In this document: positions 7,379 to 27,204 of the stretch, piece by piece
Layout: the number at the start of each line of letters is the position of its first letter
Position numbering within the stretch: the first letter of the stretch is position 1
Assembly (NCBI GenBank): GCA_950097015.1
Contig: CATNEN010000032.1
Span: forward strand, 2,728,001-2,792,000
Origin: Macrostomum hystrix
Lineage: Eukaryota > Animalia > Platyhelminthes
Direction of reading: 5' to 3'
Length of the DNA stretch: 64,000 nt
The notes under the pieces: generated by a model
The model's database searches: none
What the model was told of the DNA's origin: nothing
The model's input: the letters and a program-made list of their open reading frames with translations, nothing else
Position numbers and translations under genes: made by a program

Positions 7379-9362
7379 TTAACGCTTCCTGCGCATCTTC
7401 TGGAAGTTGTTCTTGCGCCAGAACGCGTGCCTGCTGCCGCCGATGGTCTGGTGATAGCCGTGACCCTTGCCGAGGCCGCGGCTCTTCTTAGAGGCGCTAG
7501 TCAGGCCGCGCATCTCGCGGTGCTTGTGCTTGGAGGTGCAGATCCAGTTGATGCGCGGGTCGCGCCGGATGGCCTTGTGGTTGGGATCCACCAGGATCAC
7601 CTCGTAGAACTTGTAGGTGGAGTCCTGCGCGATCCAGTAGGAGCCCAGGACCCGCAGGGCGCCCAGTTTGCGGCCGACGCGCTCCTGTGGTTAGTCAAAG
7701 TTGGAGAATAAAAATAGAATAATGACCTCATCCATCAATCACGCAGCTGGTCATGATCCTCATTCATTCAGTCAAGCAGCTGGTCATGACCCTGATTCAT
7801 TCAGTCAAGCAGCTGGTCATGATCCTCATTCATTCAGTCAAGCAGCTGGTCATGACCCTGATTCATTCAGTCAAGCAGCTGGTCATGACCCTGATTCATT
7901 CAGTCAAGCAGCTGGTCATGACCCTGATTCATTCAGTCAAGCAGCTGGTCATGACCCTGATTCATTCAGTCAAGGAGCTGGTCATGACCCTGATTCATTC
8001 AGTCAAGCAGCTGGTCATGACCCTGATTCATTCAGTCAAGCAGCTGGTCATGACCCTGATTCATTCAGTCAAGCAGCTGGTCATGATCCTCATTCATTCA
8101 GTCAAGCAGCTGGTCATGACCCTGATTCATTCAGTCAAGCAGCTGGTTATGATCCTGATTCATTCAGTCAAGCAGCTGGTCATGACCCTGATTCATTCAG
8201 TCAAGCAGCTGGTCATGACCCTGATTCATTCAGTCAAGGAGCTGGTCATGACCCTGATTCATTCAGTCAAGCAGCTGGTCATGACCCTGATTCATTCAGT
8301 CAAGCAGCTGGTCATGACCCTGATTCATTCAGTCAAGCAGCTGGTCATGACCCTGATTCATTCAGTCAAGCAGCTGGTCATGATCCTCATTCATTCAGTC
8401 AAGCAGCTGGTCATGACCCTGATTCATTCAGTCAAGCAGCTGGTCATGACCCTGATTCATTCAGTCAAGGAGCTGGTCATGACCCTGATTCATTCAGTCA
8501 AGCAGCTGGTCATGACCCTGATTCATTCAGTCAAGCAGCTGGTCATGATCCTCATTCATTCAGTCAAGCAGCTGGTCATGACCCTGATTCGTTCAGTCAA
8601 GCAGCTGGTCATGACCCTGATTCATTCAGTCAAGCAGCTGGTCATGACCCTGATTCATTCAGTCAAGCAGCTGGTCATGACCCTGATTCATTCAGTCAAG
8701 CAGCTGGTCATGACCCTGATTCATTCAGTCAAGCAGCTGGTCATGACCCTGATTCATTCAGTCAAGCAGCTGGTCATGACCCTGATTCATTCAGTCAAGC
8801 AGCTGGTCATGACCCTGATTCATTCAGTCAAGCAGCTGGTCATGACCCTGATTCATTCAGTCAAGCAGCTGGTCATGACCCTGATTGATTCAGTCAAGCA
8901 GCTGGTCATGACCCTGATTCATTCAGTCAAGCAGCTGGTCATGACCCTGATTTATTCAGTCACGAACCAAATCAATAATAATAAAAACCGAATCGATAAA
9001 TCCAGCAACACGGATTTCCTAGAAAAGCGAACACTTCAAGGTAAAAAATTCACCTCGGCAATGGCCTGATGACTGCGCTGGTTCTTTAATTGGTTGACAC
9101 CCTCGTGCACCGGCTTGCCGTAGGTGGCACCCTTCGGCACCGGGCGCTTGCGACCTCCGCGTCGGATGCGAATGCGATAGACAACGAAGCCCTGCTTGGC
9201 CTTGTAGCCGAGGCGTCGGGCCCTGTCAGGCCGGGTGGGCTTGGTGGCGCGGTGGATGACGTGCTTCTGGCGCAGGTGCCAGCAGCGGAGGCGCAGAATG
9301 AAGCGCATTACATCCGACTGCTTCTTGCGGTAGAGCTCCGAGATGAACTTGTAGGCTCCCAT
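7379..9362 (-). CDS. RPL15: 60S ribosomal protein L15 (eL15); exons 9362-9054 and 7684-7379; 204 aa
   Basis: [21 protein letters not shown]...[11 protein letters not shown]; GT-AG phase-0 intron; [34 protein letters not shown]. The spliced length matches eL15. Confidence 0.98.
7742..8962. repeat. 33-bp minisatellite (~37 copies) filling the RPL15 intron
   Basis: Unit AGCTGGTCATGACCCTGATTCATTCAGTCAAGC; near-identical copies with no spacers. Confidence 0.97.
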
Positions 9363-9444
9363 GACTGCTGCAATGTATTGATTGCGACAGGTCTGACAAA
9401 CATCACAACTTCCACGTGATTTTTTACCCTAGATTATACATCTT

Positions 9445-10190
9445 ATTCCTAGAATGCTACATTCAAATGACTTCTTATTTCCTAGAATGCTACATTCAAA
9501 TGACTTCTTATTTCCTAGAATGCTACATTCAAATGACTTCTTATTTCCTAGAATGCTACATTCAAATGACTTCTTATTTCCTAGAATGCTACATTCCAAT
9601 GACTTCTTGTTTCCTAGAATGCTACATTCCAATGACTTCTTATTTCCTAGAATGCTACATTCCAATAACTTCTTGTTTCCTAGAATGCTACATTCCAATG
9701 ACTTCTTATTTCCTAGAATGCTACATTCCAATGACTTCTTATTTCCTAGAATGCTACATTCCAATAACTTCTTATTTCCTAGAATGCTACATTCCAATGA
9801 CTTCTTGTTTCCTAGAATGCTACATTCCAATGACTTCTTGTTTCCTAGAATGCTACATTCCAATGACTTCTTGTTTCCTAGAATGCTACATTCCAATGAC
9901 TTCTTATTTCCTAGAATGCTACATTCCAATGACTTCTTATTTCCTAGAATGCTACATTCCAATGACTTCTTATTTCCTAGAATGCTACATTCCAATGACT
10001 TCTTATTTCCTAGAATGCTACATTCCAATGACTTCTTATTTCCTAGAATGCTACATTCCAATGACTTCTTATTTCCTAGAATGCTGCATTCCAATAACTT
10101 CTTATTTCCTAGAATGCTACATTCCAATAACTTCTTATTTCCTAGAATGCTACATTCCAATAACTTCCTATTTCTAAGAATGCTACATTT
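9445..10190. repeat. 33-bp minisatellite upstream of the RPL15 ATG
   Basis: Unit TTCCTAGAATGCTACATTCCAATGACTTCTTAT, ~22 copies. Confidence 0.95.
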
Positions 10191-10717
10191 CAAGCTGCAA
10201 ATTTCTCTTAATGCTTCATTCAAAAAAATTTATATATTACTCTAAACTACGTTATTTTATAGTACCTGGAGGCAATGTGTCCTTAAATGTAACATTTAGG
10301 ATTACATACCCTAGACCTGGTTTTCTTCAATTTTGCAGGCTTTAAGTAACTTAAAACTCAAAAGGCTTTGAGTAAAGGATTGATTGCCACATGCAAACGC
10401 TAGGCACTAATCTGTAGACTTGCCAGTAAGTCAGGGAAAACAATTGTTAGACAAATCTTTAGTGCAATAATTATTTACAGATAAATAATGCAGATTCAGC
10501 AAAACATTTTTAACGATGATTAGATGATTATCCAGTTTCAAAATTTTAGAGAAAAACAAAAATAACCTTAACAAAAGGTGTAATATTTTCAGCAAAAAAT
10601 ATGTGTATGCGAACATACATTTAGTAAGCATTGCAAGCCCTGATGGCACGCATTCTTTAAAACTGGATAAATAGCAATGGCAAAGTACACATTGTCCAAT
10701 AATCACACTTCAGATAG

Positions 10718-12328
10718 CTAATTATCCGAAACGGCCGAGAGGGCGGACTCCGTCAAGCCTTCACCAGTTGCACTACCGCAATTTCCATTTCCGCCGCCGC
10801 CGCAGCATCGCCCGGAGGTAGAACAGCTGACCCGCTGCTGCTGCTGCTGCTGATTGGACATCAATCGATCCCGCTGTTTCTTAGCCGAACAAGCCGACGA
10901 TTTGCCAACAGCCAGTCGGGGATTTCCAGAATTCAATCCATCCAGCAGTACGCAGGCCTTGCACAATGGCTGGCTGCTCACATAGCCGCACAGACTGCAG
11001 TTAGTGAGCTCAGGCATTCGAGCATCGGATCTGAAGCGAAGCCGCTCAGCAGCGTGTATTATGTGCAGCAGAGAGGCTGGCCTAGCCCGCTCCAGATCCT
11101 TCACCAGTGACCTGGCGTGACCTCTGTACGCAGCCGGAGCGTACAGGCACTCGGTGGCAAAGTAGTCCAGCTTCTTGAAGTAGGCGTACAGGACAATCTC
11201 CTTCTCGTAGGCGTATTTCAACGGCTTGCAACGGGCCGGGAGACCGCCGCCGGTGTGCGTCACCGCGTCGGCGCATCTGGCCAGCCTGGCCGCGTCACCG
11301 CGTAGCAGGTTCATGATGACAGTCTCGGCTACGTCGTCGGCGTTGTGCCCGGTGGCCAGCTTGTCGGCGCGCAGATGAGCGGCGCCTCGGTCAAGGGCCT
11401 GACGACGAAACACGCCGCAGAAGGTGCAGTTGCTGCGACGACCGGCAGCTCGGACCACTTCGTCCATGGTCCAGCCGTACAGGTCGCGATAGGTGAAGAT
11501 TGTCAGGGGCAGGCCCAGGCTCACCTGTCGAAAAAGGTGGCAATTCAGATAGGATTTTTGATTCGGCTATTGATTTATTATAGGATATTTCACTTTATTA
11601 GATCTATAATACACTTAATTCAGTAATGGATTATCGTTTGGAATCAATTAACTTGAGAAATAAATGAACATTAAGGATTATCGAGCATTCTGTCGAATTA
11701 TTCATTATTCTGTAAAAAATACATTAAGGATTATCCTGTATTAAATAATATATTAAGGATTTTCTAGTATTAAATAATACATTAAGGATTATCCTGTATT
11801 AAATAATATATTAAGGATTATCCTGTATTAAATAATTCATTAAGGATTATCGAGTCTGCTGTCAAATAATCGAGTAAGACCATAAGGAATGTAGTCTTGG
11901 TTGTCGAACCGTCTTTATGTATAATCAAAGAAATTTTTTAAGTAATTCCCTAAGGATTAGGTAGCTGAATTGTCATTCTAAGGGTTAACAAGTTAGCAGG
12001 CAAAGCGCAAACCTCGGTCCGTCTGAGTGCCTCAAGCGAGTCGTCACGATAACCGGCGATGCCCTCATCGATGGCCAGCAGCTGCAGGTCCAGCCCGTAG
12101 CTGTGCCGCTCATTCAGTGTCTTCATCAGATAGGCCAGCACGGTGGAGTCTTTGCCGCCCGAAGCTCCGATGGCTACCCTGTCTCCTGCTGAGAACATGC
12201 GGCTAGCTAGGATTGTGTCGTGAGTTTCTGTTTCAAAGGCCCAGAAGAAACAGTCGCGACAAACCGCGTGTCCAGTCTTGGGGCGCCGCAGCTGCGGCTT
12301 CTTGTCGCAGAAGCGGCATTTGCGAACT

Positions 12329-12376
<48 letters not shown>

Positions 12377-12402
12377 CTAGAGCCAGCTGAAGTTGCTGTG
12401 GC
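10718..12402 (-). CDS. CTU1: Cytoplasmic tRNA 2-thiolation protein 1; exons 12402-12013 and 11524-10718
   Basis: CRFC/CRDC zinc motifs, PP-loop [57 protein letters not shown], and C-terminal CSLCGY...CKAC. GT-AG phase-0 intron; N-terminal CAG/polyQ tract. Confidence 0.96.
11725..11850. repeat. ~29-bp AT-rich tandem repeat in the CTU1 intron
   Basis: TAAGGATTATCCTGTATTAAATAATA(T/C)AT, ~4 copies. Confidence 0.8.
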
Positions 12403-12834
12403 CTGAAATATTAACATATTGTCAATTACTATTTGCTCGACTCAACAGATGCAGTTGTCAAAAAAATGTAAAGGAAGAAATAAAACACATTAGAAAGCTT
12501 GTTCTTAGTTACACAAATCTTATCTAATCCGTAGTTGTATTTGCATTTCACAATTAAAAGTACAAATGCATTTAGTTGACAGTAAAGTTACCTCAGCTCA
12601 CGAAGTTAATGGCAACTAGAGCTAGCAAGAAAAAAATGCACAAGGCAATATAAAAATATACAAATTGATATATTCATACTTTGTAAGAAGAAATTAGGAA
12701 AATCTTTTCTTGTCTGTGAAAGAGAACTGCAAGAAGATGACAACACTGTGAAACAATGCATTAAGGTAGCAACACTTCGTAGTTTAAAGGCTAAATGAGC
12801 AAGCTCAGAATGAAAAAGAGTGAAAAGAGGACTC

Positions 12835-13297
12835 TGGACACAAGCTATGGATTCCCTGGGAAATCCCTAGAGCATGACACAAACTATGGATTCCCGGGAA
12901 AATCCCCAGAGCATGACACAGACTACGGATTCCCTGGTAAATCCCCAGAGCATGACACAAACTATGGATTCCCTGGGAAATCCCTAGAGCATGACACAAA
13001 CTATGGATTCCCTGGGAAATCCCTAGAGCATGACACAAACGATGGATTCCCTGGGAAATCCCTAGAGCATGACATAAACGATGGATTCCCTGGGAAATCC
13101 CCAGAGCATGACACAGACTATGGATTCCCTGGGAAATCCCTAGAGCATGACACAAACTATGGATTCCCGGGAAAATCCCCAGAGCATGACACAGACTATG
13201 GATTCCCTGGGAAACCCCCAGAGCATGACACAGACTATGGATTCCCTGGGAAACCCCCAGAGCATGACACAAACTATGGATTCCCTGGAAAATCCCC
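12835..13297. repeat. 39-bp minisatellite between the POLRMT stop and CTU1
   Basis: Unit ACTATGGATTCCCTGGGAAATCCC(T/C)AGAGCATGACACA(A/G), ~12 copies. Confidence 0.95.
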
Positions 13298-13326
13298 GGC
13301 ATGAAAAGAGATTGACATAGTCCAGT

Positions 13327-16300
13327 TTAGGAGAAGAAATACTCGGATCGGAGCACCTCGGACAGGTCAAATTCGCCACGACTAGGAATCTGCAGAATGC
13401 GCTCATTGAACAGTTTAGCGGCATCGGCCTCTTTAGTGCTCAGCGAGGCCAGCTCAGCTGGTTTGTAGGCGAACACCCGGTGCAGATGACTGCTCAGGTT
13501 GTCCAGGATTGGCCTATTGTGCAGTTCAACAAACTGCTGCCTGCAGACTTCGCCCATAGCGTCAATATCGCAGGCGTGCGTCCAGAAGCAGTCGTGCACA
13601 GCGGCGAAGGTCAAGTCGCGTCGTCGGCACTCCAGGGCCGTCAGCATCATGTGGCAGGAGTCGAGAGAATGTACGAAATTAGGCGGAAACGCGTTGGACT
13701 GCTTGACCATGTCAGGTCTGTAGGGCTGCACAACTAGCAGGCCCAACGGTGTGCGCCATTGAATTGAAGCCCTACGCAGCTTGGCGACACCTTTGGCCAG
13801 GTCCGTGAACCAGCGCTGGATGTGGGTGGCGCTAGTGAAGATGCGCCCAATGCTAGATAGGGTCATGCTAGCCAGATAGGCGGCCGCCTTCTCGCGCATA
13901 TCGTCGGGAAATTCGGCGTCGCGCAGGCGAGCCAGAATCTGCTGCTTGGCGCCGTACTCCGTCACGCCATAGACTGTGGTCATGACAGACTGCTTGATAG
14001 TGCGCCTGACGATGTAGCCTTGAAGTGCTTGAGCCACCGCGTGGCCCTTGGCCGCCTCCGAGGCTCTGGTTGATTCGATCAGCTCGGCCACCGCCTGGTA
14101 GACATCCTGCGGCCGGTCAACCGCTCTCAGATTGACAGCGAGAGCACCGTCTAGATCCCTGCCCATGGCGGCATAGTGCTGGAGGCCGTTGCAGCTGCCG
14201 TCCTGGTGCACGGGAAATGCGCTGCAGTATCGCTCCGGCCCGTCCGGGTGCAGAGCGGCTGCTCGAATCTCGGCACAGGTTGCCAGGGTCTGCCAGGGCG
14301 CCTCGTCGTTCTGCCACCAGCCCCTGCCGGTCCAGGGCCGCTCGGCGCTGTCGATAATGTCCGGCAGAAGCGAATCAGCCATGGCCAGACGCTCAGCGTT
14401 GGTCAGCTTCTTGCCTAGATCGGCCACGTTGATGGCGTGAATGCGCAGCCATCGCCAGCCGCGCTCGCCTAGAGGCTTTGGCTTGTTGAAGCGCAGCAGG
14501 GAGCGGGACAGGTCGCAGCTCATGTGGTTCAGGTGGGGCGGCACAGGGTAGGCCCGGCCGCTGCGAGACAAAATTTGAGGATTATGTTTGTAAAACACTG
14601 CTTACTTGTGCTTCTTCAATAAGTAGCTAAAATAATAACACAAACTGCTATTTAACACTCACAGATAAGAAACTTCTCTTTAGATTCTAAGAAGCTGCTA
14701 TTCAGATGTCAAACTGTCATTAAAGCACGACATGAATTTTAAGAAACTGCCAATCAAAACTGTCTGATTCTAAGAAACAGCCCTTTAGATTCTAAGAAAC
14801 TACCATTCATTCAGATTCAAAGAAACTGCCACGCATTCAGATTCCAAGAAACTGCCACGCATTCAGATTCCAAGAAACTGCCATGCATTCAGATTCCAAG
14901 AAACTGCCACGCATTCAGATTCCAAGAAACTGCCACGCATTCAGATTCCAAGAAACTGTCATGCATTCAGATTCCAAGAAACTACCATGCATTCAGATTC
15001 CAAGAAACTGCCATGCATTCAGATTCCAAGAAACTACCATGCATTCAGATTCCAAGAAACTACCATGCATTCAGATTCCAAGAAACTACCATGCATTCAG
15101 ATTCCAAGAAACTACCATGCATTCAGATTCAAGAAACTGCCATTTAACACTGTCTGATTCTAAGAAACACAAACTTCAATTAAAGTCTGCATGATTCTAA
15201 GCACGACGCTTCTTACGCTGATATTTGGACGCACAAAACTTGGTATTTTGATTCTTTGAGACAAAAATACAAGTTGTAACTCGGCACCAGACTAACCGAA
15301 AGTCAATATTATGCGGCAAATAGAACGGCTGGTCTTTCAGCCAATCAGCGATTGACAGCCGGTAGAGCTCAGTGCACCAAAGCGAATATCTCTCCCGCTC
15401 CTCCTTTCTCTCAGCCGCTTTGCCACGTCGAAGCGCCCGAATATCGGCAGCCGGAGTGCCCGGAGGCGGCGGAGCCAGCGGCAGCACCGTGCGCGGCCTG
15501 GCGGGCAGGGCCAGATGCTCGGCTCCGTTGGCATTGAAACGGGCGACGATGAGGCGCAGGAGCTTGGAGTCGACTCGCCAAGCGCACGAGCTGACAGTCT
15601 GGGTGAGTTGGGCATCGATGAAAAAGATCAACTGAAGGAAAAATAGAAAGATGTTCCGAAGGATTTCGGAAAACTTAATCGAGTTAATCTAGATTAAAAA
15701 ATTTCCGAATTCCCAATTTAGATAAACAAACAAAAACCGAAACAAGAACCGAAATTCGGAACCGAAATTTCCGAATTTTTCATCTAGTTAAACAACCGAA
15801 ATTTCCGAGTTCTTAATCTAGTTAAACTACCGAAATTTCCGAATTCTTGATCTAGTTAAACTACCGAAATTTCCGAATTCTTGATCTAGTTAAACTACCG
15901 AAATTTCCGAATTCTTGATCTAGTTAAACAACCGAAATTTCCGAATTCTTGATCTAGTTAAACTACCGAAATTTCCGAATTCTTGATCTAGTTAAACTAC
16001 CGAAATTTCCGAATTCTTGATCTAGTTAAACTACCGAAATTTCCGAATTCTTGATCTAGTTAAACAACCGAAATTTCCGAATTCTTGATCTAGTTAAACT
16101 ACCGAAATTTCCGAATTCTTGATCTAGTTAAACTACCGAAATTTCCGAATTCTTGATCTAGTTAAACTACCGAAATTTCCGAATTCTTAATCTAGTTAAA
16201 CTACCGAAATTTCCGAATTCTTAATCTAGTTAAACAACCGAAATTTCCGAATTCTTAATCTAGTTAAACTACCGAAATTTCCGAATTCTTAATCTAGTTG

Positions 16301-19300
16301 ACCTACCGAAATTTTCTAATTCTTAATCTAGTTAAACTACCGAAATTTCCGAATTCTTGATCTAGTTAAACTACCGAAATTTCCGAATTCTTGATCTAGT
16401 TAAACTACCGAAATTTCCGAATTCTTGATCTAGTTAAACAACCGAAATTTCCGAATTCTTGATCTAGTTAAACTACCGAAATTTCCGAATTCTTGATCTA
16501 GTTAAACTACCGAAATTTCCGAATTCTTGATCTAGTTAAACTACCGAAATTTCCGAATTCTTAATCTAGTTAAACTACCGAAATTTCCGAATTCTTAATC
16601 TAGTTAAACAACCGAAATTTCCGAATTCTTAATCTAGTTAAACTACCGAAATTTCCGAATTCTTAATCTAGTTGACCTACCGAAATTTTCTAATTCTTAA
16701 TCTAGTTAAACTACCGAAATTTTCTAATTCTTAATCTAGTTAAACTACCGAAATTTTCTAATTCTTAATCTAGTTAAACTACTGAAATTTTCTAATTCTT
16801 AATCTAGTTAAACAACCGAAATTTCCGAATTCTTGATCTAGTTAAACAACCGAAATTTCCGAATTCTTGATCTAGTTAAACTACCGAAATTTCCGAATTC
16901 TTGATCTAGTTAAACTACCGAAATTTCCGAATTCTTGATCTAGTTAAACTACCGAAATTTCCGAATTCTTGATCTAGTTAAACAACCGAAATTTCCGAAT
17001 TCTTGATCTAGTTAAACTACCGAAATTTCCGAATTCTTAATCTAGTTGACCTACCGAAATTTTCTAATTCTTAATCTAGTTAAACTACCGAAATTTTCTA
17101 ATTCTTAATCTAGTTAAACTACTGAAATTTTCTAATTCTTAATCTAGTTAAACAACCGAAATTTCCGAATTCTTAATCTAGTTGACCTACCGAAATTTTC
17201 TAATTCTTAATCTAGTTAAACTACCGAAATTTTCTAATTCTTAATCTAGTTAAACTACTGAAATTTTCTAATTCTTAATCTAGTTAATCAATCGAAATTT
17301 CCGAATTCTTAATCTAGTTAATCAATCGAAATTTCCGAATTCTTAATCTAGTTAAACAACCGAAATTTCCTATTACTAAACTAGTTAAACAAACCGAAAT
17401 TTCTAAAATAAAAAACTAAAGTCTTTAGAAACAAAGATTTCGGCAACCTTCCATTTTTAGACAACACCGAATTTGAGTAAGCCAGAAGCACAGACAATCA
17501 GGCCAGTTTTATACCTGCAAAGCGTCTAGGACAATCTGAGGCGGCCCAGCCAATTGAATCTCGCTCAGCTGTTCAGTAGCGTGATAGCGCAGCAGGGAGG
17601 TGTCCCTAGTCAGGTAGCGAGCGGGCCAATGCGGCCTAGCCAGCATAGGCAGTTTAGTTGGTTGAAACATGAGCGCCATAGAGTCCTGAGCATTCTGAAA
17701 CGCTCTGGCTAGGACTGGGTGCACGCGAATGTGCTGTATGTTAGTGTCCGGATCCAGGACGTCATAAGTAGCCGGCACACCTCTGTAGGTCAGTGAGCTC
17801 AGGTGGCTGGCTAGGTAATTGGCTAGCTTCTCTTGCCAGCCCCGAGGCAGAGCTGGCCAACCAAGATGACCGGTTGACTTGCCCAGCTCCTGAGTAGGCG
17901 GGATTTGATGAGATCCAATCAGTAATCATTTAAATTACCTTCAGTTAATCAGCTATAATCATCATCATTACCTTTCTAGCGTTAAGCTGAAGCCTGGCAT
18001 AAAACGAGTCAGCCAAGTCCCTTAGAAAGATGTACTTTGGCGTGTAGTTTAACACCTGCATAGAAGCCAGGAGGGTGGCCTGTCGCAGCAGGAATTGAGC
18101 AGTGTCCTCTTCGCTCAGTACGGCCAGTAAGGGATAAATTGCCTTATTAGCCGATTCGTTAACGCGCAGATCGCGCCTCAGTTTTGGCACCAAACGGCGC
18201 AGTTCAACTAACCAGCGATCTTTCACTTCGGCGGCCTCTTTAGCGGCCTGGCGTCGGGCAGCCGGCGACACTTTGGCTAGGGGCGATGCGGCGCATAGGA
18301 TTGACACGGCCGGTTCTGACTGCTCCACCTGGGACGGAGGGGGTGGCGGGTTTGAGTTGTTTTAATTGCTCTTAATTAACAGGTGAATTCTACATACGCA
18401 CAGGTAACAATAACAGGTGAATTCTACATACGCACAGGTGACAATAACAGGTAAATTCTACATAACGCACAGGTCACAATAACCGGTGAATTCTACATAC
18501 GCACAGGTAACAATAACAGGCAATTCTACATACGCACAGATAACAATAACAGGTAAATTCTACATACGCACAGATAACAATAACAGGTAAATTCTACATA
18601 CGCACAGATAACAATAACAGATAAATTCTACATACGCACAGGTAACAATAACAGGTAAATTATACATACGCACAGGTAACAATAACAGGTAAATTATACA
18701 TACGCACAGGTGACAATAACCGGTGAATTCGAACAACGAACAGGTGACTATGATCAGTGAATTTCAACTCGTACATACGGAAAGTGACATCGCACCTGCA
18801 ACTGAAGCATCTCTGCCAGCTTCTCTGCTTCCTCCCGGCTGCCGTGAGTGACTGAACAAGCTGACCCATGAGAAGCGGCAGCAGGCGCAACTGATTGGCC
18901 CAGCGAATAAGATCGCAATCTGGCTAGTTTCAGTCCGGCAGCCAGGTCTGAATCCACATCCTCCTGCAGTTGGGCCAGCCAATCAGACTCGGCAGCCAAT
19001 CGGACGGTCAGTTCGGCTATTTCAGCACTGCCCAGTTGACCGGCTGCCCGGAGGCCCACCGCCACTGAGCTAGCACTTAGGCGCTGGCCATCTTTGGCTG
19101 CACCAGCTAGGACAGATAGACTAGAGGACAGGGTGGGCCTGTGCAGAAGGACCGCTGCTGGAACCTGGGTGTGGTGACAATAGTTTTGTTTATATAACGG
19201 CCCATTTAAGAACATGAACTTGTCAGTAAGTGAATGTATGCAATAAAGATTTGAATATACCAAAAGTAAAAAGCCTTTGGCATATAAAGACATGTTTCTT

Positions 19301-20186
19301 TACTCTTTCTAGGGCAGCTGCAGTCTCTTTTTAAATTTCTATGTACTTTGCTAGCTCTCCTGTTACCTCTGTATTTTCTTGCACTATTAAATATGCTTCT
19401 GTCTTCTGCTGTGAGACTACGAAAGTTCTTTCTATGGATGAGATGTCTCCAACAACATTTTACCTGACCGCCTTATAAGGATTTAAGTTGCACCGGAAGA
19501 AAAAATCTACTTCATTTTCGTTACTAGATCTACTTCATTACCTTGCAGTTCCTAAAGTTAATTCTCTCAATTAAGCCTCGATCCCAACCAACAGGAAACG
19601 ACAGGTAAAAATCGATAGTTAGAAATCTGCCATCTCACCTGTTCATCCAGCACAATCAGGCCGTGGCGCAGGCTGTGCAGTGTATGGAATCTAGCCCTCT
19701 GGTTAGCCAACTGTTTAGCAGCTAATTCGTGTTGACCGCGAAGGCACAGGCAGAGCAGCGAGGCGGCCAGTTCTTCGTTAAAACGCTCCGCTTTGCGAGC
19801 GAAAACGCTGCCAATGCTAGGCGAGAAATCGGCCATATTGACAGGCCTATCTGGCTGCGGAATGCGCAATCGAAACATTTCAACAGCTTGACGACAGCGG
19901 AGACGCAGCTTAGCGTCTAACCATAGGCGCTCAGACATCTGGTCAAGCTGTCGACTGAGTACAGTGGCTAGAATTCTCGGACAATCAATATTCTTTAATT
20001 GTAAGGAGAATCTACTGGCTTCAGTTGTGCCTGATTTTTCAGTCGATGGCATGGACTCCACAGCGGATGATGAAGGGTTGCCGTCATCAGCTCTGGAACT
20101 GTGTCGCAAACGTCTGGGAATGGGAGCCGATGCTGCTGTGACAGCGACTGGCGCAGATGTACTCTGATGCTGGCGAGCTGCTAAGC
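13327..20186 (-). CDS. POLRMT: Mitochondrial (T7-like) RNA polymerase; exons ~20186-19639, 19164-18796, 18328-17972, 17889-17515, 15598-15297, 14560-13327; first exon not located
   Basis: PHNIDFR|GRAYP splice junction, HQDGSCNGLQHY (motif A), IKQSVMTTVYG (motif B), PPNFVHSLD, VHDCFWTH (motif C), and the YFFS terminus. GT-AG introns keep the frame. Confidence 0.95.
14815..15140. repeat. 26-bp intronic minisatellite
   Basis: Unit GCATTCAGATTCCAAGAAACT(G/A)CCA(C/T). Confidence 0.93.
15770..17400. repeat. 34-bp intronic minisatellite (~48 copies)
   Basis: Unit TCTAGTTAAACTACCGAAATTTCCGAATTCTTGA, degenerating at both edges. Confidence 0.96.
18378..18730. repeat. 34-bp intronic minisatellite
   Basis: Unit ACAGGTAAATTCTACATACGCACAGGTAACAATA, ~10 copies. 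Confidence 0.92.
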
Positions 20187-23100
20187 CTGCATTTGTTTTT
20201 CATATGTTCAAATCATTTTAATCATGCCCTACTACAATATAAACACAATGTCATCAATGACTTACATCTGCAACACATCTGTTGGGTCTCTGCTAGTGCA
20301 AGAACCCGCAGCAATGGCAGCATTGCTGAAATGACAATTTACAATAAACCGAGTTTATTTAATTATTATATAGTTAGCTAGTCAGATAGGCTAGATTCAT
20401 GGTAGTAATAGATTATGACTTCTTAGTCTCAACTAGCTATTTTATAACATTAAGGTAATGTACTATACTTAGGTCATTTTACTTATTTCTATAGACATGC
20501 TGTATCCTAATCTGGTGGCATTATTCTCAATTTTTGTTTTTTTACTCTTTAATTTATTCCAATCTTGAAAGTTAAATAAGTGCCAAAATATAGAATTCTA
20601 TTGTCTGACAGGGCACGGATGTTCACAAGTCTCTATGGCACTTTTTTTATTTTATTCATTGCAATTGTTCTTCAGCTTTCTTAAATTGACTATATTGCAT
20701 TCAACTTTGTATTTCTTGCATAGAGAGCTTGTGAACATGGCAGCCATTGCCATTCACTCTGTTTCCCACCTAGCCATGCACACAATTGAAACAAAGTGAA
20801 TAGCTGCCATGCACATTGCTCCACTTACAAAAGCTGAAGACATTAACAATATCAGTTATAAAATTGTAGCTAGTAAAAAATTAAAGTGTTTAGCAGGGTA
20901 GTGATGTTCCGAAATTGTTTGTTAATTGAAATCAAAATATAACTGTTCCTAAATTATAATTTAAATTTTCACAAAGTACTACAATACTAAGATTGTAGTC
21001 TCCAGCAAACATTTGCTTCTACATCTATTGTTTTCCTAAATCAATTTATCTTGTACAAACTATTAATTGACACTAAAATAAGCTGGAGTTGTATTTATGT
21101 AAGATTTTGGCAGCTAGAATTTGAACTATTTCATATGGTCAAAATATGCTCACAATGCTTGTTTTGATTTTTACCTTGAGATTTTCAAAATCATGAAGTT
21201 GATAAAATCAAATTTTGTTCCAACTTTTCTACAGCACTAAATGTAGGATGCATACATGCGCAACACCCAGCCGACCTAGCTAAACCGGCCATGTGAAACA
21301 AGGGCCAAGCAAGGTAAGTCACAAAAACCAATCGACCAAGCGCAAAAAAATCAAAGGGGGACCAAGGGACAAAAAAGGAAGGCGTGAAGAAAAAGAAAAA
21401 AGGGAGAGAAAAAGAGAGCAAATGAGAGCAAACTAAGTTGTAAATAGAGCAATGAAACAAACTAAGTCGTAAATAGAGCAAAAACTAAGTTGTATGGCCA
21501 GCTAAGATTTGGGAGGTTGCACATGTATGGTAGGATATCTTATCAAACTTTTTGTTGTTTTAATTCAGAAGTTTTAACATTCTTGTTCTTTTAGTTACTA
21601 TTTGGCAGCTAACGTTGCTACCAAGGAACTACTATCAGAAGAATGTTCCAAAGATATTCTTTTTAATGCACTTTTATTTCTCTAGGGTAGAATTTCTCTC
21701 TCTCTCTCTCTCTCCTGTATGTTCATATGTGACCTGAGAGGTTTTTTAACACTGGTTATGCACTCAATGTCAGGCATACCTGTGGATTAGAGGAATACAG
21801 CAATAGGCCTTTCAATTGCCTATGGATAGGCACCAAAATTCTAGTATTATTCTCCAAAGTTATTTTTTGGGAACTACTCTGGTTATCCTCTGAGTTCTTT
21901 CTAGAGAATTTCACATTTTCTTGAATTTGATTAATATCTTTGTTTGCTTGTTAACTAACTTAAGCAGTTTGCAAGGAAAGTTATCCCAAAGGAAAATGAT
22001 GACTTTCTTCTCTAAATATTCTTTTTATATCATGTTTTATTTACAATTATTAACAAAAACTTACTAAAAATTTTATTTGATCATACTTTTTTAACAAACA
22101 TTTATTAGCAAAAAATATTTTAGGATCATTTCACTTATAAAATTTATTTTAATTTTTGCAATTGCATAAATTTAACTTAGTAAATTAAGGAATTAAAAGT
22201 TTAGAGGCCTATTACAATTACATTTGGCTCCAAAAGGTCTAAAATTAGGGAAAAAAATAATTTGAAATCAAACTTTAAGAACATAAGAACATAAAGTTGG
22301 TATGAATTGCAGATTTTGGGGGTCAACAAAGTGCAGCAATTGGTTGACATACAACGCAGCCGCCGCCACCGTCCGTGACCGTCTGCAACATGAAATCGCT
22401 AATTGAACTTTCAGCCGCAAATTAAATTTGCATGGTTAAAAGAAAGCAAAGTTGTTAATATAATATGTTTTTTTAAAGCACTGCAATAACATATTTATAT
22501 CTTTAATTTGAAGCGAATAACTTTGTTTTTGTGCGTTGAATTAACGTAGCCAACGGTCTTCAATGAGGTCATTGTTTATGAGTACTCGTTTAAGAATTCG
22601 CTTCCTGTCTACCACTTATGGGTTTGGATCCTTAAATAATAGGAAATTAAAGTACTATTATGTAGATCGAAGGAACAGCTATGGTTTTACCGCTTGGCAT
22701 TTGATCTCGGAAATCTCGTCCACTTAGCTTGTTAGCAGGCGCCGGCTTATAAATAAAAAAAACAATGTTGATTGCGTGTCTACTTGACCCAAAAAAAGAT
22801 GTTTATTTTAGTTCTGTGAACGTTGAAGGTCTCAGGAGGCTCAGGAGGTTTTCCTAGCTATTTGAAGAGTAAAGAACAAATATATTAAAATATTTTTATT
22901 GCTTTTGTCTTACTCATGCATGTACTTACTGTATGTACCGTGTTATATATAGCATTTAAATGCATAAAAAATCTAATGCTGAAGATTTTCACCAGAAAAA
23001 AGCATCCCGGTAAGACTTCACCGAGAAAACTTCGACGGGACAAAGCAGGAAACAATGAGTACGATTAGAAACTGCAATCAGTCCGATATTTAATTGTATC

Positions 23101-24575: not shown

Positions 24576-25418
24576 TCACTCCGTCTTCAGATCGCCCCCA
24601 TCCATAATCCGACGCCGCTTCTTGTCGTAGATCTCGTAGACGACGACGATGATCAGCATGATGACAATCTCGCCGATAATGGCCAACAAGGGGGCTAGAT
24701 AGCTCATCGGACTCTTGACCCGCAGGAACAGCTTGGCGGTGTTCTCGCCATATAGGTTCGTCGAAGCGCAGGTGATAAAACCACGGTCCACATCGTAACT
24801 GACTGAACTCAGGTAGATCGTGTTGTTGTTAGCGATTCTGAACGCCGGATCCACCGACTTCGTCCAGCGGATGTCGCCCGTTGGGTAGCCATCAACAAGG
24901 CATGTAATGGTGACACTCTCCCCGGGCCACACTGCAGAGTCGTATTCGTTCACTCCGTTCACCTTCACGGTGAGCAGTGGCACAGAGAGGAACCGGCCTG
25001 TGGCTCTGACGGTCTGGTTCACAATGCACACGTAACCGGCAGTGAAGTCAGACTTGATTGGATAGCTGATGGTCAGCACGGAGATGGTCGTGTTATCGCT
25101 GACAGACGTCGTTGCCACAGTGATCCGCGCATCGGCCGTCGGACTAGAATTGCTGTTCTCCATTCGCCAGATGGTGTCGCTAACTCTCAGCGTCGTCAAG
25201 CTAGTAGCCCTGCAGGTAAGAGTCAGCTTCTTCAGCTTGCCAATTGTGTATCGTTCTCCCGATGCGGACTGGCCATTGTCAGTGAGGCTCACCGACACAT
25301 TCTCAACGGTGACGTTGATGTCCTGAGCCGCAGCCCAGCCTGCCAGCAATAGTGTCGGCAGCAGCAGGGCAGCAGCAGCCATGGGGTTGTGGCGCTGACT
25401 GCGTCCAAGCATTGGCAC
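24576..25418 (-). CDS. Basigin/neuroplastin-like two-Ig-domain type I membrane protein (intronless CDS)
   Basis: Signal peptide; two Ig folds (LTCRA..W..YVCIV; ITCLVDGYP..IRW..ITCAST); a transmembrane helix with the intramembrane Glu typical of the basigin family (PLLAIIGEIVIMLIIVVVYE); basic tail. Confidence 0.85.
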   Translation of the reverse strand: MPMLGRSQRHNPMAAAALLLPTLLLAGWAAAQDINVTVENVSVSLTDNGQSASGERYTIGKLKKLTLTCRATSLTTLRVSDTIWRMENSNSSPTADARITVATTSVSDNTTISVLTISYPIKSDFTAGYVCIVNQTVRATGRFLSVPLLTVKVNGVNEYDSAVWPGESVTITCLVDGYPTGDIRWTKSVDPAFRIANNNTIYLSSVSYDVDRGFITCASTNLYGENTAKLFLRVKSPMSYLAPLLAIIGEIVIMLIIVVVYEIYDKKRRRIMDGGDLKTE

Positions 25419-27204
25419 CGGACTGAGTTGGCGAGATTCGCATCGACCAAGGAATTGTTCGGCAGTATGCCAGCTAAGCAGGTGGCGGGGATATTATTCA
25501 AGAAAATGGCAGAAATAGAGGAGAGCGCGAGGGAGCGTTTCCCCTTGGCCTCGTCGGCTTTTAACCGCAGAGAAAGGCCACTCCCAACCTTCCCTTCCTC
25601 TCCTCCTTACTTTGCGACTTCCTATTTCGATTGAATCTTTCAGTCGGCCGGCCAGCTGCCATTGGTCTCTGCCGAAGCAGGTTGGTGCGAGGGAAAGGAA
25701 GAACGCAATGCGCATTCAGTTGCTATGCGACAAGCCGATATGGGAAAATACTCACTGGGAAGAGGGGATAAGGGAGAAAAGTCTAGGAAGATTGTGCTCA
25801 GGGCTTATTTAATGACTGTCTCTTTTTGCCCCCCATCTAGTCTCTCCCATCTTCCTCCTCCCGCCTCAACTGCGCAGAGGATCAGACAAGACGTCGGGTT
25901 GGGACGGTTCTGCACTTTGTGCCGCTTAGATCTTGAGAAATCCGCTTCTAGCCGGTGCGCAGGACGGGCCTCCCATCCTTTTCCTACCTGCTCCGGCGGA
26001 ATAAGAAGCAACTAATGACAGGTAGAATAGGGCAGAAAGGGAGCGAGCGGGAAATGACGAGATCAGCTTACTTCCATGACCCTCTGCATCGCCATTTTCT
26101 ATAGCGAGTATAAGCACAACAATAGCTATCGCCAGATCTGTTGTAGTTGATCTGCAATATGTAATTCCCTATTGCTCTCGCTATACTCAGAGCTAAGTAA
26201 ACACCATATCAAGTGGGCTAGGGCAAACCTTGCAGTTCAACGAAATTTCTAATCTGAGCACGCGCGGATTTAATTCACGAAAAATGTGTGCGATTTCATT
26301 AAAATTCTGTATAGACCATATGTTATGGTTGCATTTGTTCAACCTGGAGAGTACACTCTGCATTTGTATGTGCTCAAGTGAAAGAGCAGTTAAATATTCT
26401 TCAATTTGATCTGGTAACGTTCCTTTATTATTTTGTTGTTTGTTTCTGATTTCTGTATTGTACGAGTAGCTAAAGAGTGGTTTCACTAAGAAAGGTAAAG
26501 GACGTTGTGCACTATACTCTTTTTAGTATTGCTGATTTTTTTACTGAAGTCTTCTGAGGCCGGGTAGGGACATAGGGTACTTATTTTTAGCTTTTTCCCA
26601 TAGGAATAGCCCCGGCTGTGGCATCTGGTCTCAGCCGCTTAGCTCTGGTTCAGCAGTTCATCCATCATTTCTGCAGCCAATCGTGTAGGTGTAATACTAA
26701 CAAAGGTAGCTCAATGAACGCGCGTTGCCTCATAAACAACAAAATTAAGTTCATAACAACGGGATGCCAAAGCAGAAAAAGATTTGCCCGTTCAGTTCAG
26801 TTCAAACAGCTCAGAACTGGTTAGCTGAAAAAAATCAAGCTTCAGTGGGTGGGACAAAGGAAACTATACATGCTGTCATGAGCGCGTTATGAGTTTTCTC
26901 ACAGTACAGCTCACATTGAGAGAGGTAGAGAGAAAAACTACCCCAGTTGCCTTGACAGCGGAGGGCGGGGTTGGTGTGAGGGCAGGCGTGCAGCTCAAAG
27001 CTGAGCTTGAGTCAATATAGCCCACAATGTACACTTGCTGCCCATTCTACCCTTGCAGGGCCGCACTCTGGACAGCTGGCGTGTGAACCGTTCTTCTTTC
27101 GAAAGCAGAAATTGAAAGAAAACTTTGACAACACAATAGCAGATTGATTGAGGAAATTTCGATTGTGAGCTGTCAGTCTCAACTGAATTATTCCAGAATT
27201 AGTC

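What the first reader, a model, noticed from the sequence alone, without database searches (positions are those of the whole stretch)
13680..13760. Mitochondrial-type RNA polymerase lacks the specificity loop
Seen: WRTPLGLLVVQPYR is joined directly to PDMVKQSNAFPPNF within one exon. Established: T7 RNAP, yeast Rpo41 and human POLRMT have a roughly 25-residue beta-hairpin (the specificity loop) between QPYR/QEY and the KQ..PPNF segment, used for promoter reading and the RNA exit channel. The catalytic motifs are intact. Inference: a promoter-independent enzyme, a primase-like paralog, or a lineage with altered mitochondrial transcription initiation.
Basis: partly seen in the sequence, partly recalled or inferred. 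Interest (0 to 1): 0.7.

Follow-up and report, generated by a model that had tools for sequence, protein, structure and literature searches.

The report
Flatworm mitochondrial RNA polymerase without specificity loop
The only mitochondrial RNA polymerase gene of this flatworm genome is intact and expressed but has cleanly lost the roughly 24-residue hairpin that related enzymes use to read promoters, so these mitochondria must choose where to start transcription in some other way.

Summary
The minus-strand exon 13330-14560 encodes the C-terminal 410 residues of a POLRMT-type polymerase. QPY is followed by only 9 residues (RPDMVKQSN) before AFPPNF. Across 390 homologues this spacing is 14-73, with a mode of 33-34. 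The missing piece matches human POLRMT residues about 1084-1109, and the published specificity loop is 1085-1108.

It is not an assembly error. A 90x DNA contig and two spliced cDNA contigs from another study cover the site without a gap.

The gene is single-copy in the 220-Mb assembly, so the "primase-like paralog" reading fails. The exon keeps 106 of 111 highly conserved columns. It has no other indel longer than one residue, and it folds confidently onto human POLRMT.

In a tree the protein is sister to the trematode enzymes, whose loops are expanded to 51-54 residues. Other agents' notes name Macrostomum.

Two further findings fit reduced promoter reading. The stretch holding the TFB2M-docking lever loop and the intercalating hairpin is about 11 residues short. 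Only a TFB1M-type factor was found, with no TFB2M-type gene.

Loops are also shortened in nematodes, Hymenoptera and an ostracod, so this is the extreme of an undocumented trend. How initiation works here is inferred, not shown.

The parts
13327..14560 (-). Last exon of the POLRMT gene. The CDS is 13330-14560 (410 full codons plus the last base of a split Arg codon) and the stop is 13327-13329. It encodes the palm and fingers part of the polymerase domain.
   Evidence: ORF. Pfam PF00940 E=1.3e-138. Human POLRMT E=1e-126. Exon start fixed by cDNA contigs X2 and X5.
13693..13719 (-). Nine-residue linker RPDMVKQSN (exon residues 281-289) in place of the specificity-loop beta-hairpin. The base residues K and Q (human K1114 and Q1115) are kept.
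   Evidence: Human loop limits 1085-1108 from PMC11642874.
13720..13752 (-). TPLGLLVVQPY, the conserved strand that leads into the loop in other enzymes.
   Evidence: Modelled as strands 267-269 and 275-277.
13660..13692 (-). AFPPNFVHSLD, the conserved segment that follows the loop.
14167..14214 (-). Motif A region PVHQDGSCNGLQHYAA (catalytic Asp).
   Evidence: (invariant D120, G121, C123, N124).
13960..14007 (-). Motif B region RRTIKQSVMTTVYGVT.
   Evidence: (invariant R185, K189, M193, Y197, G198).
13576..13599 (-). Motif C region VHDCFWTH (second catalytic Asp).
14561..15296 (-). Last intron, 736 nt, GT..AG, phase 2. It holds a 26-nt minisatellite at 14787-15143.
   Evidence: cDNA loose ends at 14561. 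Junction worked out. Repeat.
15297..15631 (-). Preceding exon (...SSCAWRVDSKLL...RYSLWCTELYRLSIADWLKDQPFYLPHNIDF-R). The 3' end is fixed by cDNA. The 5' end is inferred.
   Evidence: tblastn with four homologues, alignment, cDNA junction.
17512..17925 (-). Stop-free stretch holding the N-terminal-domain exon with the helix, the shortened lever loop and the intercalating hairpin (WPALPRGWQEKLANYLASHLSSLTYRGVPATYDVLDPDTNIQHIRVHP), then LPMLARPHW. Exon limits are inferred.
   Evidence: Weak Pfam RPOL_N match, E=0.008. Alignments. Human numbering. Spacing survey.
17948..20199 (-). Three further stop-free stretches (17948-18361, 18757-19299, 19570-20199) that most likely hold the upstream exons of the same gene. 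They are very diverged, and their limits and the start codon are not resolved.
   Evidence: Frame scan. No significant Pfam or PDB match. The X5 cDNA contig runs 1777 nt beyond the last exon.

Best explanation
This is the single, functional, nuclear gene for the mitochondrial single-subunit RNA polymerase (POLRMT orthologue) of a flatworm. In this lineage the whole specificity-loop hairpin has been excised, and only its base (…QPY-R-PDMVKQ…) remains. The catalytic core is under normal constraint. Shown here: the deletion is real in DNA and mRNA, the gene is single-copy, the fold and motifs are intact, and there is no compensating insertion in the C-terminal domain. Inferred: the contacts that the loop makes in T7, yeast and human initiation complexes cannot exist here. 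In human these are to the DNA backbone around -7 to -5 and to template bases -4/-3 through T1101 and N1103. Start-site choice must therefore rest on what is left: the intercalating hairpin, possibly the G-helix, the fingers, and accessory proteins (a TFB1M-type factor, and a TFAM-like protein noted elsewhere in the genome). The demand for sequence specificity is probably low. Elongation should be little affected.
For: Sequence and PDB alignment. Pfam RNA_pol E=1e-138. One locus in the 220-Mb genome. DNA contig at 90x and spliced cDNA contigs from a second study, with no gap at the site. The spacing of 9 residues is the minimum among 391 sequences (range of the others 14-73, mode 33-34). 106 of 111 columns that are at least 90% conserved are kept, which is mid-range among 62 sequences. 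The loop deletion is the only indel longer than 1 residue. AlphaFold2 model pLDDT 93.5, with about 92 across the junction. TMq 0.92 and rmsd about 2.2 A to human POLRMT; alignments are about 25 columns longer against structures where the human loop is resolved. The tree places the protein sister to Schistosoma+Fasciola at SH-aLRT 98. Loop function and limits come from PMC11642874, PMC7939475, 10.1101/2025.04.03.647028 and PMC8934621. Loop substitutions in the human enzyme cut promoter-specific initiation but leave primer extension intact (PMC8934621). The WP-to-HP stretch holding the lever loop (TFB2M hairpin) and the intercalating hairpin is 48 residues against a mode of 59-60. Only DIMT1 and a TFB1M-type gene were found in the genome.
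Against: There is no functional data of any kind. The mitochondrial genome and its promoters are not in the assembly. No close relative could be compared, so the age of the deletion and selection on it are unknown. The N-terminal half is so diverged that the G-helix could not be aligned reliably. The absence of TFB2M rests on two six-frame searches that may miss a fast-evolving gene. The long terminal branch (0.95 against a median of 0.46) leaves room for partly relaxed constraint.
Confidence: 0.75

Rival explanations
1. Promoter-independent enzyme. Without the loop the polymerase starts at many sites or at structural features such as single-stranded or AT-rich DNA. Discrete RNAs then arise only by processing of long transcripts.
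For: The loop, the lever loop and TFB2M all appear reduced or absent. Yeast and human enzymes are active without factors on single-stranded and bubble templates (PMC7939475).
Against: The intercalating hairpin is kept at nearly full length. A TFB1M-type gene is present, and a TFAM-like gene is noted elsewhere. No transcription start data exist. Other animals with shortened loops are not known to lack promoters.
Confidence: 0.15
2. Assembly or haplotype artefact. The real gene carries the loop and a deletion was introduced in assembly or exists in one allele only.
For: None found.
Against: The DNA contig at depth 90 and two cDNA contigs from another study all lack any insertion. No alternative joint or indel was reported at 13680-13760 in four runs.
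Confidence: 0.02
3. Specialised or decaying paralogue (for example a primase-like copy) beside a normal loop-bearing POLRMT elsewhere.
For: Plants do have several phage-type polymerases with different promoter competence (PMC5040748).
Against: A six-frame search of the whole 220-Mb assembly finds this locus only. The ORF is intact, spliced and expressed, and conserved columns are kept. The protein is placed as the flatworm orthologue.
Confidence: 0.04

Closest known systems
Human POLRMT (PDB 4BOC, 6ERP, 9MN4 and others)
   Same: About 48-52% identity over the last 410 residues. Same fold (TMq 0.92). Motifs A, B and C, the C-terminal YFFS and the loop-base K-Q are conserved.
   Different: Residues 1084-1109, which hold the specificity loop 1085-1108 with T1101 and N1103, have no counterpart. 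The lever loop (588-604) region is about 9 residues shorter. The N-terminal half is barely alignable.
Trematode POLRMT (Schistosoma, Fasciola, Paragonimus, Opisthorchis)
   Same: Closest relatives in the tree (SH-aLRT 98) and best database hits at 51-55% identity.
   Different: Their QPY-to-FPPNF spacing is 51-54, so the loop is expanded, not lost. In S. haematobium the C-terminal domain is split over about 9 exons, whereas here it is one exon.
Other animal POLRMTs with shortened loops: the ostracod Cyprideis torosa (spacing 14), an unnamed Logan protein in the Hymenoptera clade (17), named aculeate Hymenoptera (23-26), nematodes (21), acanthocephalans
   Same: Independent reduction of the same element. 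The Cyprideis case is contiguous in its genomic DNA.
   Different: All keep at least 5 more residues than this enzyme. Nematodes keep a hairpin of about 10 residues. The cases in the copepod Lepeophtheirus and in Neoechinorhynchus are ambiguous, with annotated mini-introns or in-frame stops over the loop region.
T7 RNA polymerase and yeast Rpo41
   Same: Same polymerase family (E=1e-35 and 1e-95).
   Different: Both rely on the specificity loop for base-specific promoter recognition (PMC5040748 and PMC4558008 citing Cheetham 1999 and Nayak 2009). Nayak et al. described a 26 +/- 3 residue element at this place in phage-type polymerases generally. That element is absent here.

Membership tests
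Single-subunit (T7-like, Pol A family) DNA-directed RNA polymerase | RNA_pol polymerase domain (Pfam PF00940) above the curated cut-off | tested here: met
   463 bits against a cut-off of 22, E=1.3e-138.
Single-subunit (T7-like, Pol A family) DNA-directed RNA polymerase | Catalytic motifs A (DGSCNG), B (R..K..MT.VYG) and C (HD.FWTH), and the C-terminal aromatic tail | tested here: met
   All are present and fall in invariant columns of a 62-sequence alignment.
Single-subunit (T7-like, Pol A family) DNA-directed RNA polymerase | Specificity-loop beta-hairpin between the QPY strand and the KQ..FPPNF helix. This is a characteristic promoter-reading element, not the basis of homology. | tested here: not met
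   Spacing is 9 residues against a mode of 33-34. The model shows a direct turn.
Animal mitochondrial RNA polymerase (POLRMT orthologue) | Orthology: groups inside animal POLRMTs with the organism's relatives, and is single-copy | tested here: met
   Sister to trematodes at SH-aLRT 98. One locus.
Animal mitochondrial RNA polymerase (POLRMT orthologue) | N-terminal promoter-binding domain (Pfam RPOL_N, PF14700) with the intercalating hairpin | tested here: inconclusive
   RPOL_N scores only 16 bits against a cut-off of 30.1. The hairpin-like segment VPATYDVLDPDTNIQHIRVHP aligns to human 603-626. The exons were not joined.
Animal mitochondrial RNA polymerase (POLRMT orthologue) | PPR domain and mitochondrial presequence in the N-terminal extension | tested here: inconclusive
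   No PPR hit in the upstream stretches. The start codon is unresolved.
Animal mitochondrial RNA polymerase (POLRMT orthologue) | Works with a TFB2M-type initiation factor | tested here: inconclusive
   Only DIMT1 and a TFB1M-type gene were found, by a Pfam RrnaAD search and a paralogue search of the whole genome. A diverged TFB2M could be missed.

The most novel reading that the evidence does not exclude
This flatworm runs mitochondrial transcription with a stripped-down initiation apparatus. The polymerase has lost the specificity loop and most of the TFB2M-docking lever loop, and the genome lacks TFB2M. Start-site selection would then be done by a different factor set or be largely sequence-independent. 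This would be a natural counter-example to the view that the loop is a universal promoter-recognition element of phage-type RNA polymerases.
Probability: 0.25. Interest if true: 0.7.

Novelty: new variant of a known kind. Interest (0 to 1): 0.5.

Why it matters
The specificity loop is treated in the literature as one of three conserved promoter-binding elements of all single-subunit RNA polymerases. In mammals it is a determinant of species-specific promoter use and of mito-nuclear compatibility. A naturally loop-less enzyme that is single-copy and expressed shows that an animal can do without the loop in vivo. It offers a ready-made minimal polymerase for biochemistry and cryo-EM, to ask what the loop is really needed for. 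The survey also shows that loop length is far more variable in animals than the published '26 +/- 3' suggests: the flanking-motif spacing runs from 9 to 73 residues. Mitochondrial promoter recognition may therefore have been rebuilt repeatedly in fast-evolving invertebrate lineages.

Tried and rejected
1. Exon-skipping origin. I asked whether the loop had been a separate exon, lost through a mis-spliced cDNA. In Schistosoma haematobium the whole loop lies inside one exon (residues 1062-1188), so there is no support. Vertebrate gene structures were not examined.

2. Closer relatives. The exhaustive representative search and a fragment-oriented word search gave nothing above 55% identity. A Schistosoma-seeded search returned only trematodes among flatworms. 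I therefore could not tell whether the loss is species-, genus- or order-wide.

3. Mitochondrial genome. There is no COX1 match in the assembly, so promoters and gene order could not be examined.

4. TFB2M. It was not found, but I had no tool-derived TFB2M sequence to search with, so this is reported as inconclusive.

5. Lepeophtheirus salmonis and Neoechinorhynchus agilis looked loop-less in their annotated proteins. Their genomic DNA shows the region annotated as mini-introns of 78 and 57 nt with in-frame stops. I do not count them as confirmed cases. Halotydeus and Ephemera were not checked and may be gene-model artefacts.

6. The G-helix (human R502) could not be aligned, because the fragment alignment misplaced that exon.

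7. Run X9 (a second organism label) held only a 221-nt identical piece away from the loop, so it is uninformative.

8. Literature searches for loop-less mitochondrial polymerases and for flatworm mtRNAP found nothing. A search for specificity loop plus TEFM plus RNA exit also found nothing.

9. A joined full-length protein model was not built or searched. All searches were made exon by exon, by reference.

Full report
WHAT IS THERE

On the minus strand, the ORF 13327-14598 reads ...IQWRTPLGLLVVQPYRPDMVKQSNAFPPNFVHSLDSCHMMLTALEC... without interruption. It matches Pfam RNA_pol (PF00940) at E=1.3e-138. It matches human POLRMT chains at about 1e-126, yeast Rpo41 at 1e-95 and T7 RNA polymerase at 1e-35.

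HMMER has to split the human match in two. Query 10-300 aligns with human 800-1090, and query 294-423 aligns with human 1109-1230. Human residues about 1084-1109 therefore have no partner. [quoted passage not shown] The missing piece is thus the loop itself, almost to the residue. The conserved base residues K and Q (human K1114 and Q1115) remain.

IS IT REAL?

I laid four public runs on 13310-14860.
- A DNA contig at depth 90 (X1) spans the whole stretch with no gap.
- Contigs of X2 and X5, from a different study, cover the exon with no gap. They leave the window at 14561 into letters that are the reverse complement of the upstream exon end (FYLPHNIDF).
- These two are therefore spliced cDNA.

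This fixes a 736-nt GT..AG intron at 14561-15296 and an exon start at 14560. It also shows that the loop-less form is what is transcribed. Two single-base differences were seen, one synonymous and one D70N. An assembly deletion is excluded.

ONE GENE OR TWO?

A six-frame search of the whole 220-Mb assembly with this exon finds only this locus. The 'primase-like paralog' idea therefore fails. This must be the enzyme that transcribes the mitochondrial genome.

IS IT STILL A WORKING POLYMERASE?

- In a 62-sequence alignment (A1) the exon keeps 106 of 111 columns that are at least 90% conserved. That is mid-range for the set.
- Motifs A, B and C and the C-terminal YFFS are present.
- Apart from two single-residue insertions and one single-residue gap, the only length difference from the majority is the loss of 23 majority-filled columns after residue 280. 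Nothing was inserted elsewhere in this domain to compensate.
- AlphaFold2 gives mean pLDDT 93.5 and about 92 across the junction. The strands at 267-269 and 275-277 run by a short turn into the helix that starts at 284.
- Foldseek places the model on human POLRMT with TMq 0.92 and rmsd 2.1-2.2 A. Alignments are about 25 columns longer against initiation-complex structures such as 9GZO and 9MN4 than against elongation or apo structures such as 4BOC, 5OLA and 3SPA. This fits a human loop that is resolved only in initiation complexes. That last point is my inference from alignment lengths.

HOW UNUSUAL IS IT?

I measured the number of residues between QPY and [A/G]FPPNF in every homologue fetched.
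- Across 390 sequences the range is 14-73, with a mode of 33-34. This gene has 9, the minimum.
- Trematodes have 51-54.
- Shorter values occur repeatedly:
  - nematodes: 21, in 14 sequences;
  - an unnamed Logan protein that groups with aculeate Hymenoptera: 17;
  - the named Hymenoptera: 23-26;
  - the annelid Owenia and the mollusc Aplysia: 22-23;
  - the acanthocephalan Pomphorhynchus: 23;
  - the ostracod Cyprideis torosa: 14.

- I checked Cyprideis in its genomic DNA, and the short form is contiguous in one open stretch.
- The apparently loop-less annotated proteins of Lepeophtheirus and Neoechinorhynchus are ambiguous. Their loop regions are annotated as introns of 78 and 57 nt and carry in-frame stops.

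A published comparison had described a 26 +/- 3 residue element at this position in phage-type polymerases generally (Nayak et al. 2009, as quoted in PMC5040748). The survey shows the element is much more plastic in animals, and this gene is the extreme. Full-text searches found no report of a loop-less mitochondrial polymerase, and nothing on flatworm mtRNAP.

WHOSE GENE IS IT?

A maximum-likelihood tree of 88 C-terminal domains puts the protein as sister to Schistosoma+Fasciola with SH-aLRT 98, on a long branch (0.95 against a median of 0.46). Best database identities are only 51-55%, so no close relative is available. Notes from other agents on this genome call it a Macrostomum flatworm, one of them M. 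hystrix, with a spliced leader ending in AUG. I did not verify the genus. The flatworm placement agrees with my tree. Because trematodes have expanded loops, the loss is not a general flatworm trait. Whether it is species-wide, genus-wide or older could not be determined.

THE REST OF THE INITIATION APPARATUS

The N-terminal half of the gene is very diverged. Pfam RPOL_N scores only 16 bits in the stretch 17512-17925, and the upstream stretches match nothing.

Using a marsupial sequence to carry human numbering, the following correspondences hold:
- The segment VPATYDVLDPDTNIQHIRVHP corresponds to the human intercalating hairpin region. It is kept, only about 2 residues shorter.
- The preceding lever loop, also called the TFB2M hairpin (human 588-604), is about 9 residues shorter.

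The spacing from the WP motif to the HP motif, which spans the helix, the lever loop and the hairpin, is 48 residues here. The mode is 59-60 in 140 full-length homologues.

In the whole genome, the Pfam RrnaAD profile and a search with the genome's own TFB1M-type protein find only two genes:
- DIMT1, whose best PDB match is 1ZQ9 at 2e-51.
- A TFB1M-type gene, whose best PDB matches are human and mouse TFB1M at 1e-47, with the SAM-binding motifs intact.

No TFB2M-type gene appeared. This absence is only suggestive, because six-frame, exon-by-exon searches can miss a fast-evolving gene. Another first-reader note reports a TFAM-like gene elsewhere in the genome; I did not check it. The mitochondrial genome is not in the assembly.

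HOW IT MOST LIKELY WORKS

Established knowledge:
- In T7 and yeast the loop makes base-specific promoter contacts.
- In human complexes it binds the DNA backbone around -7 to -5, and its base reads template -4/-3 together with the G-helix.
- Changing T1101, H1102 and N1103 lowers promoter-specific initiation but leaves primer extension intact (PMC8934621).

Inference: here those contacts cannot form, while catalysis and elongation should be normal. Start-site choice must then depend on the intercalating hairpin, the fingers, perhaps the G-helix, and accessory proteins. Alternatively it is only weakly sequence-specific. The joint reduction of the loop and the lever loop, together with the missing TFB2M, points to a simplified initiation system, but none of this has been tested functionally.

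ORIGIN OF THE DELETION

I tested whether the loop might have been a separate exon lost through a mis-spliced cDNA. In S. haematobium the loop sits inside one exon, so that idea has no support. The C-terminal domain is a single 410-codon exon here, against about nine exons in Schistosoma.

LIMITS

- The reads tool was used once, on 1,551 letters.

VERDICT

This is a new variant of a known enzyme family and the extreme case of an undocumented trend. It is of moderate interest and worth a bench test.

Noticed in passing
window 17512-17925 (-): The WP-to-HP stretch of this POLRMT, which holds the lever loop (the TFB2M-docking hairpin, human 588-604) and the intercalating hairpin, is 48 residues against a mode of 59-60 in 140 homologues. 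About 9 of the missing residues fall in the lever loop.
   Followed up: partly
G000:C38:28046800-28048041 (+) (L003) and G000:C2:6006334-6010579 (-) (L002, L004, L006): The genome holds one TFB1M-type mitochondrial dimethyladenosine transferase gene (two exons, SAM motifs intact) and DIMT1. Two whole-genome searches found no TFB2M-type paralogue.
   Followed up: partly
L010:2421-2600 (Neoechinorhynchus agilis) and L008:3432-3600 (Lepeophtheirus salmonis): In these two animals the DNA that should encode the strand and specificity loop of POLRMT carries in-frame stop codons. It is annotated as a mini-intron of 57 nt and 78 nt respectively. This could be decay or 'intronisation' of the loop, or an assembly or annotation error.
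   Followed up: partly
L009:5785-6297 (Cyprideis torosa): The ostracod POLRMT has only 14 residues between QPY and AFPPNY, contiguous in genomic DNA. This is a second, independent near-complete loss of the loop.
   Followed up: partly
window 12837-13304, 14787-15143, 15761-17403, 18377-18745: Minisatellites with units of 39, 26, 34 and 34 nt lie directly after the POLRMT stop codon and inside three of its introns. Similar 33-nt arrays lie at 7735-8962 and 9441-10193.
   Followed up: no
window 19570-20260 (-): The 5' end of the POLRMT gene is unresolved. The long open stretch begins right after a stop codon with an Arg/Ser/Ala-rich, presequence-like segment but has no ATG until codon ~50. A short out-of-frame ATG ORF sits at 20203. 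A spliced-leader AUG did not fit in frame at the two AG sites I looked at.
   Followed up: partly
window 14352: All three informative runs read T where the window has C, which changes Asp70 to Asn in the last exon. A second difference, at 14167, is synonymous.
   Followed up: partly
window 10718-12417 (-) and 9036-9362 (-): The downstream neighbours on the same strand are a CTU1-like PP-loop and zinc-ribbon gene, whose first exon carries a run of 17 glutamines, and a ribosomal protein L15e exon.
   Followed up: partly
window 24579-25493 (-): A 305-residue open stretch encodes immunoglobulin-type domains followed by a hydrophobic segment, probably a cell-surface protein gene upstream of POLRMT.
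   Followed up: no
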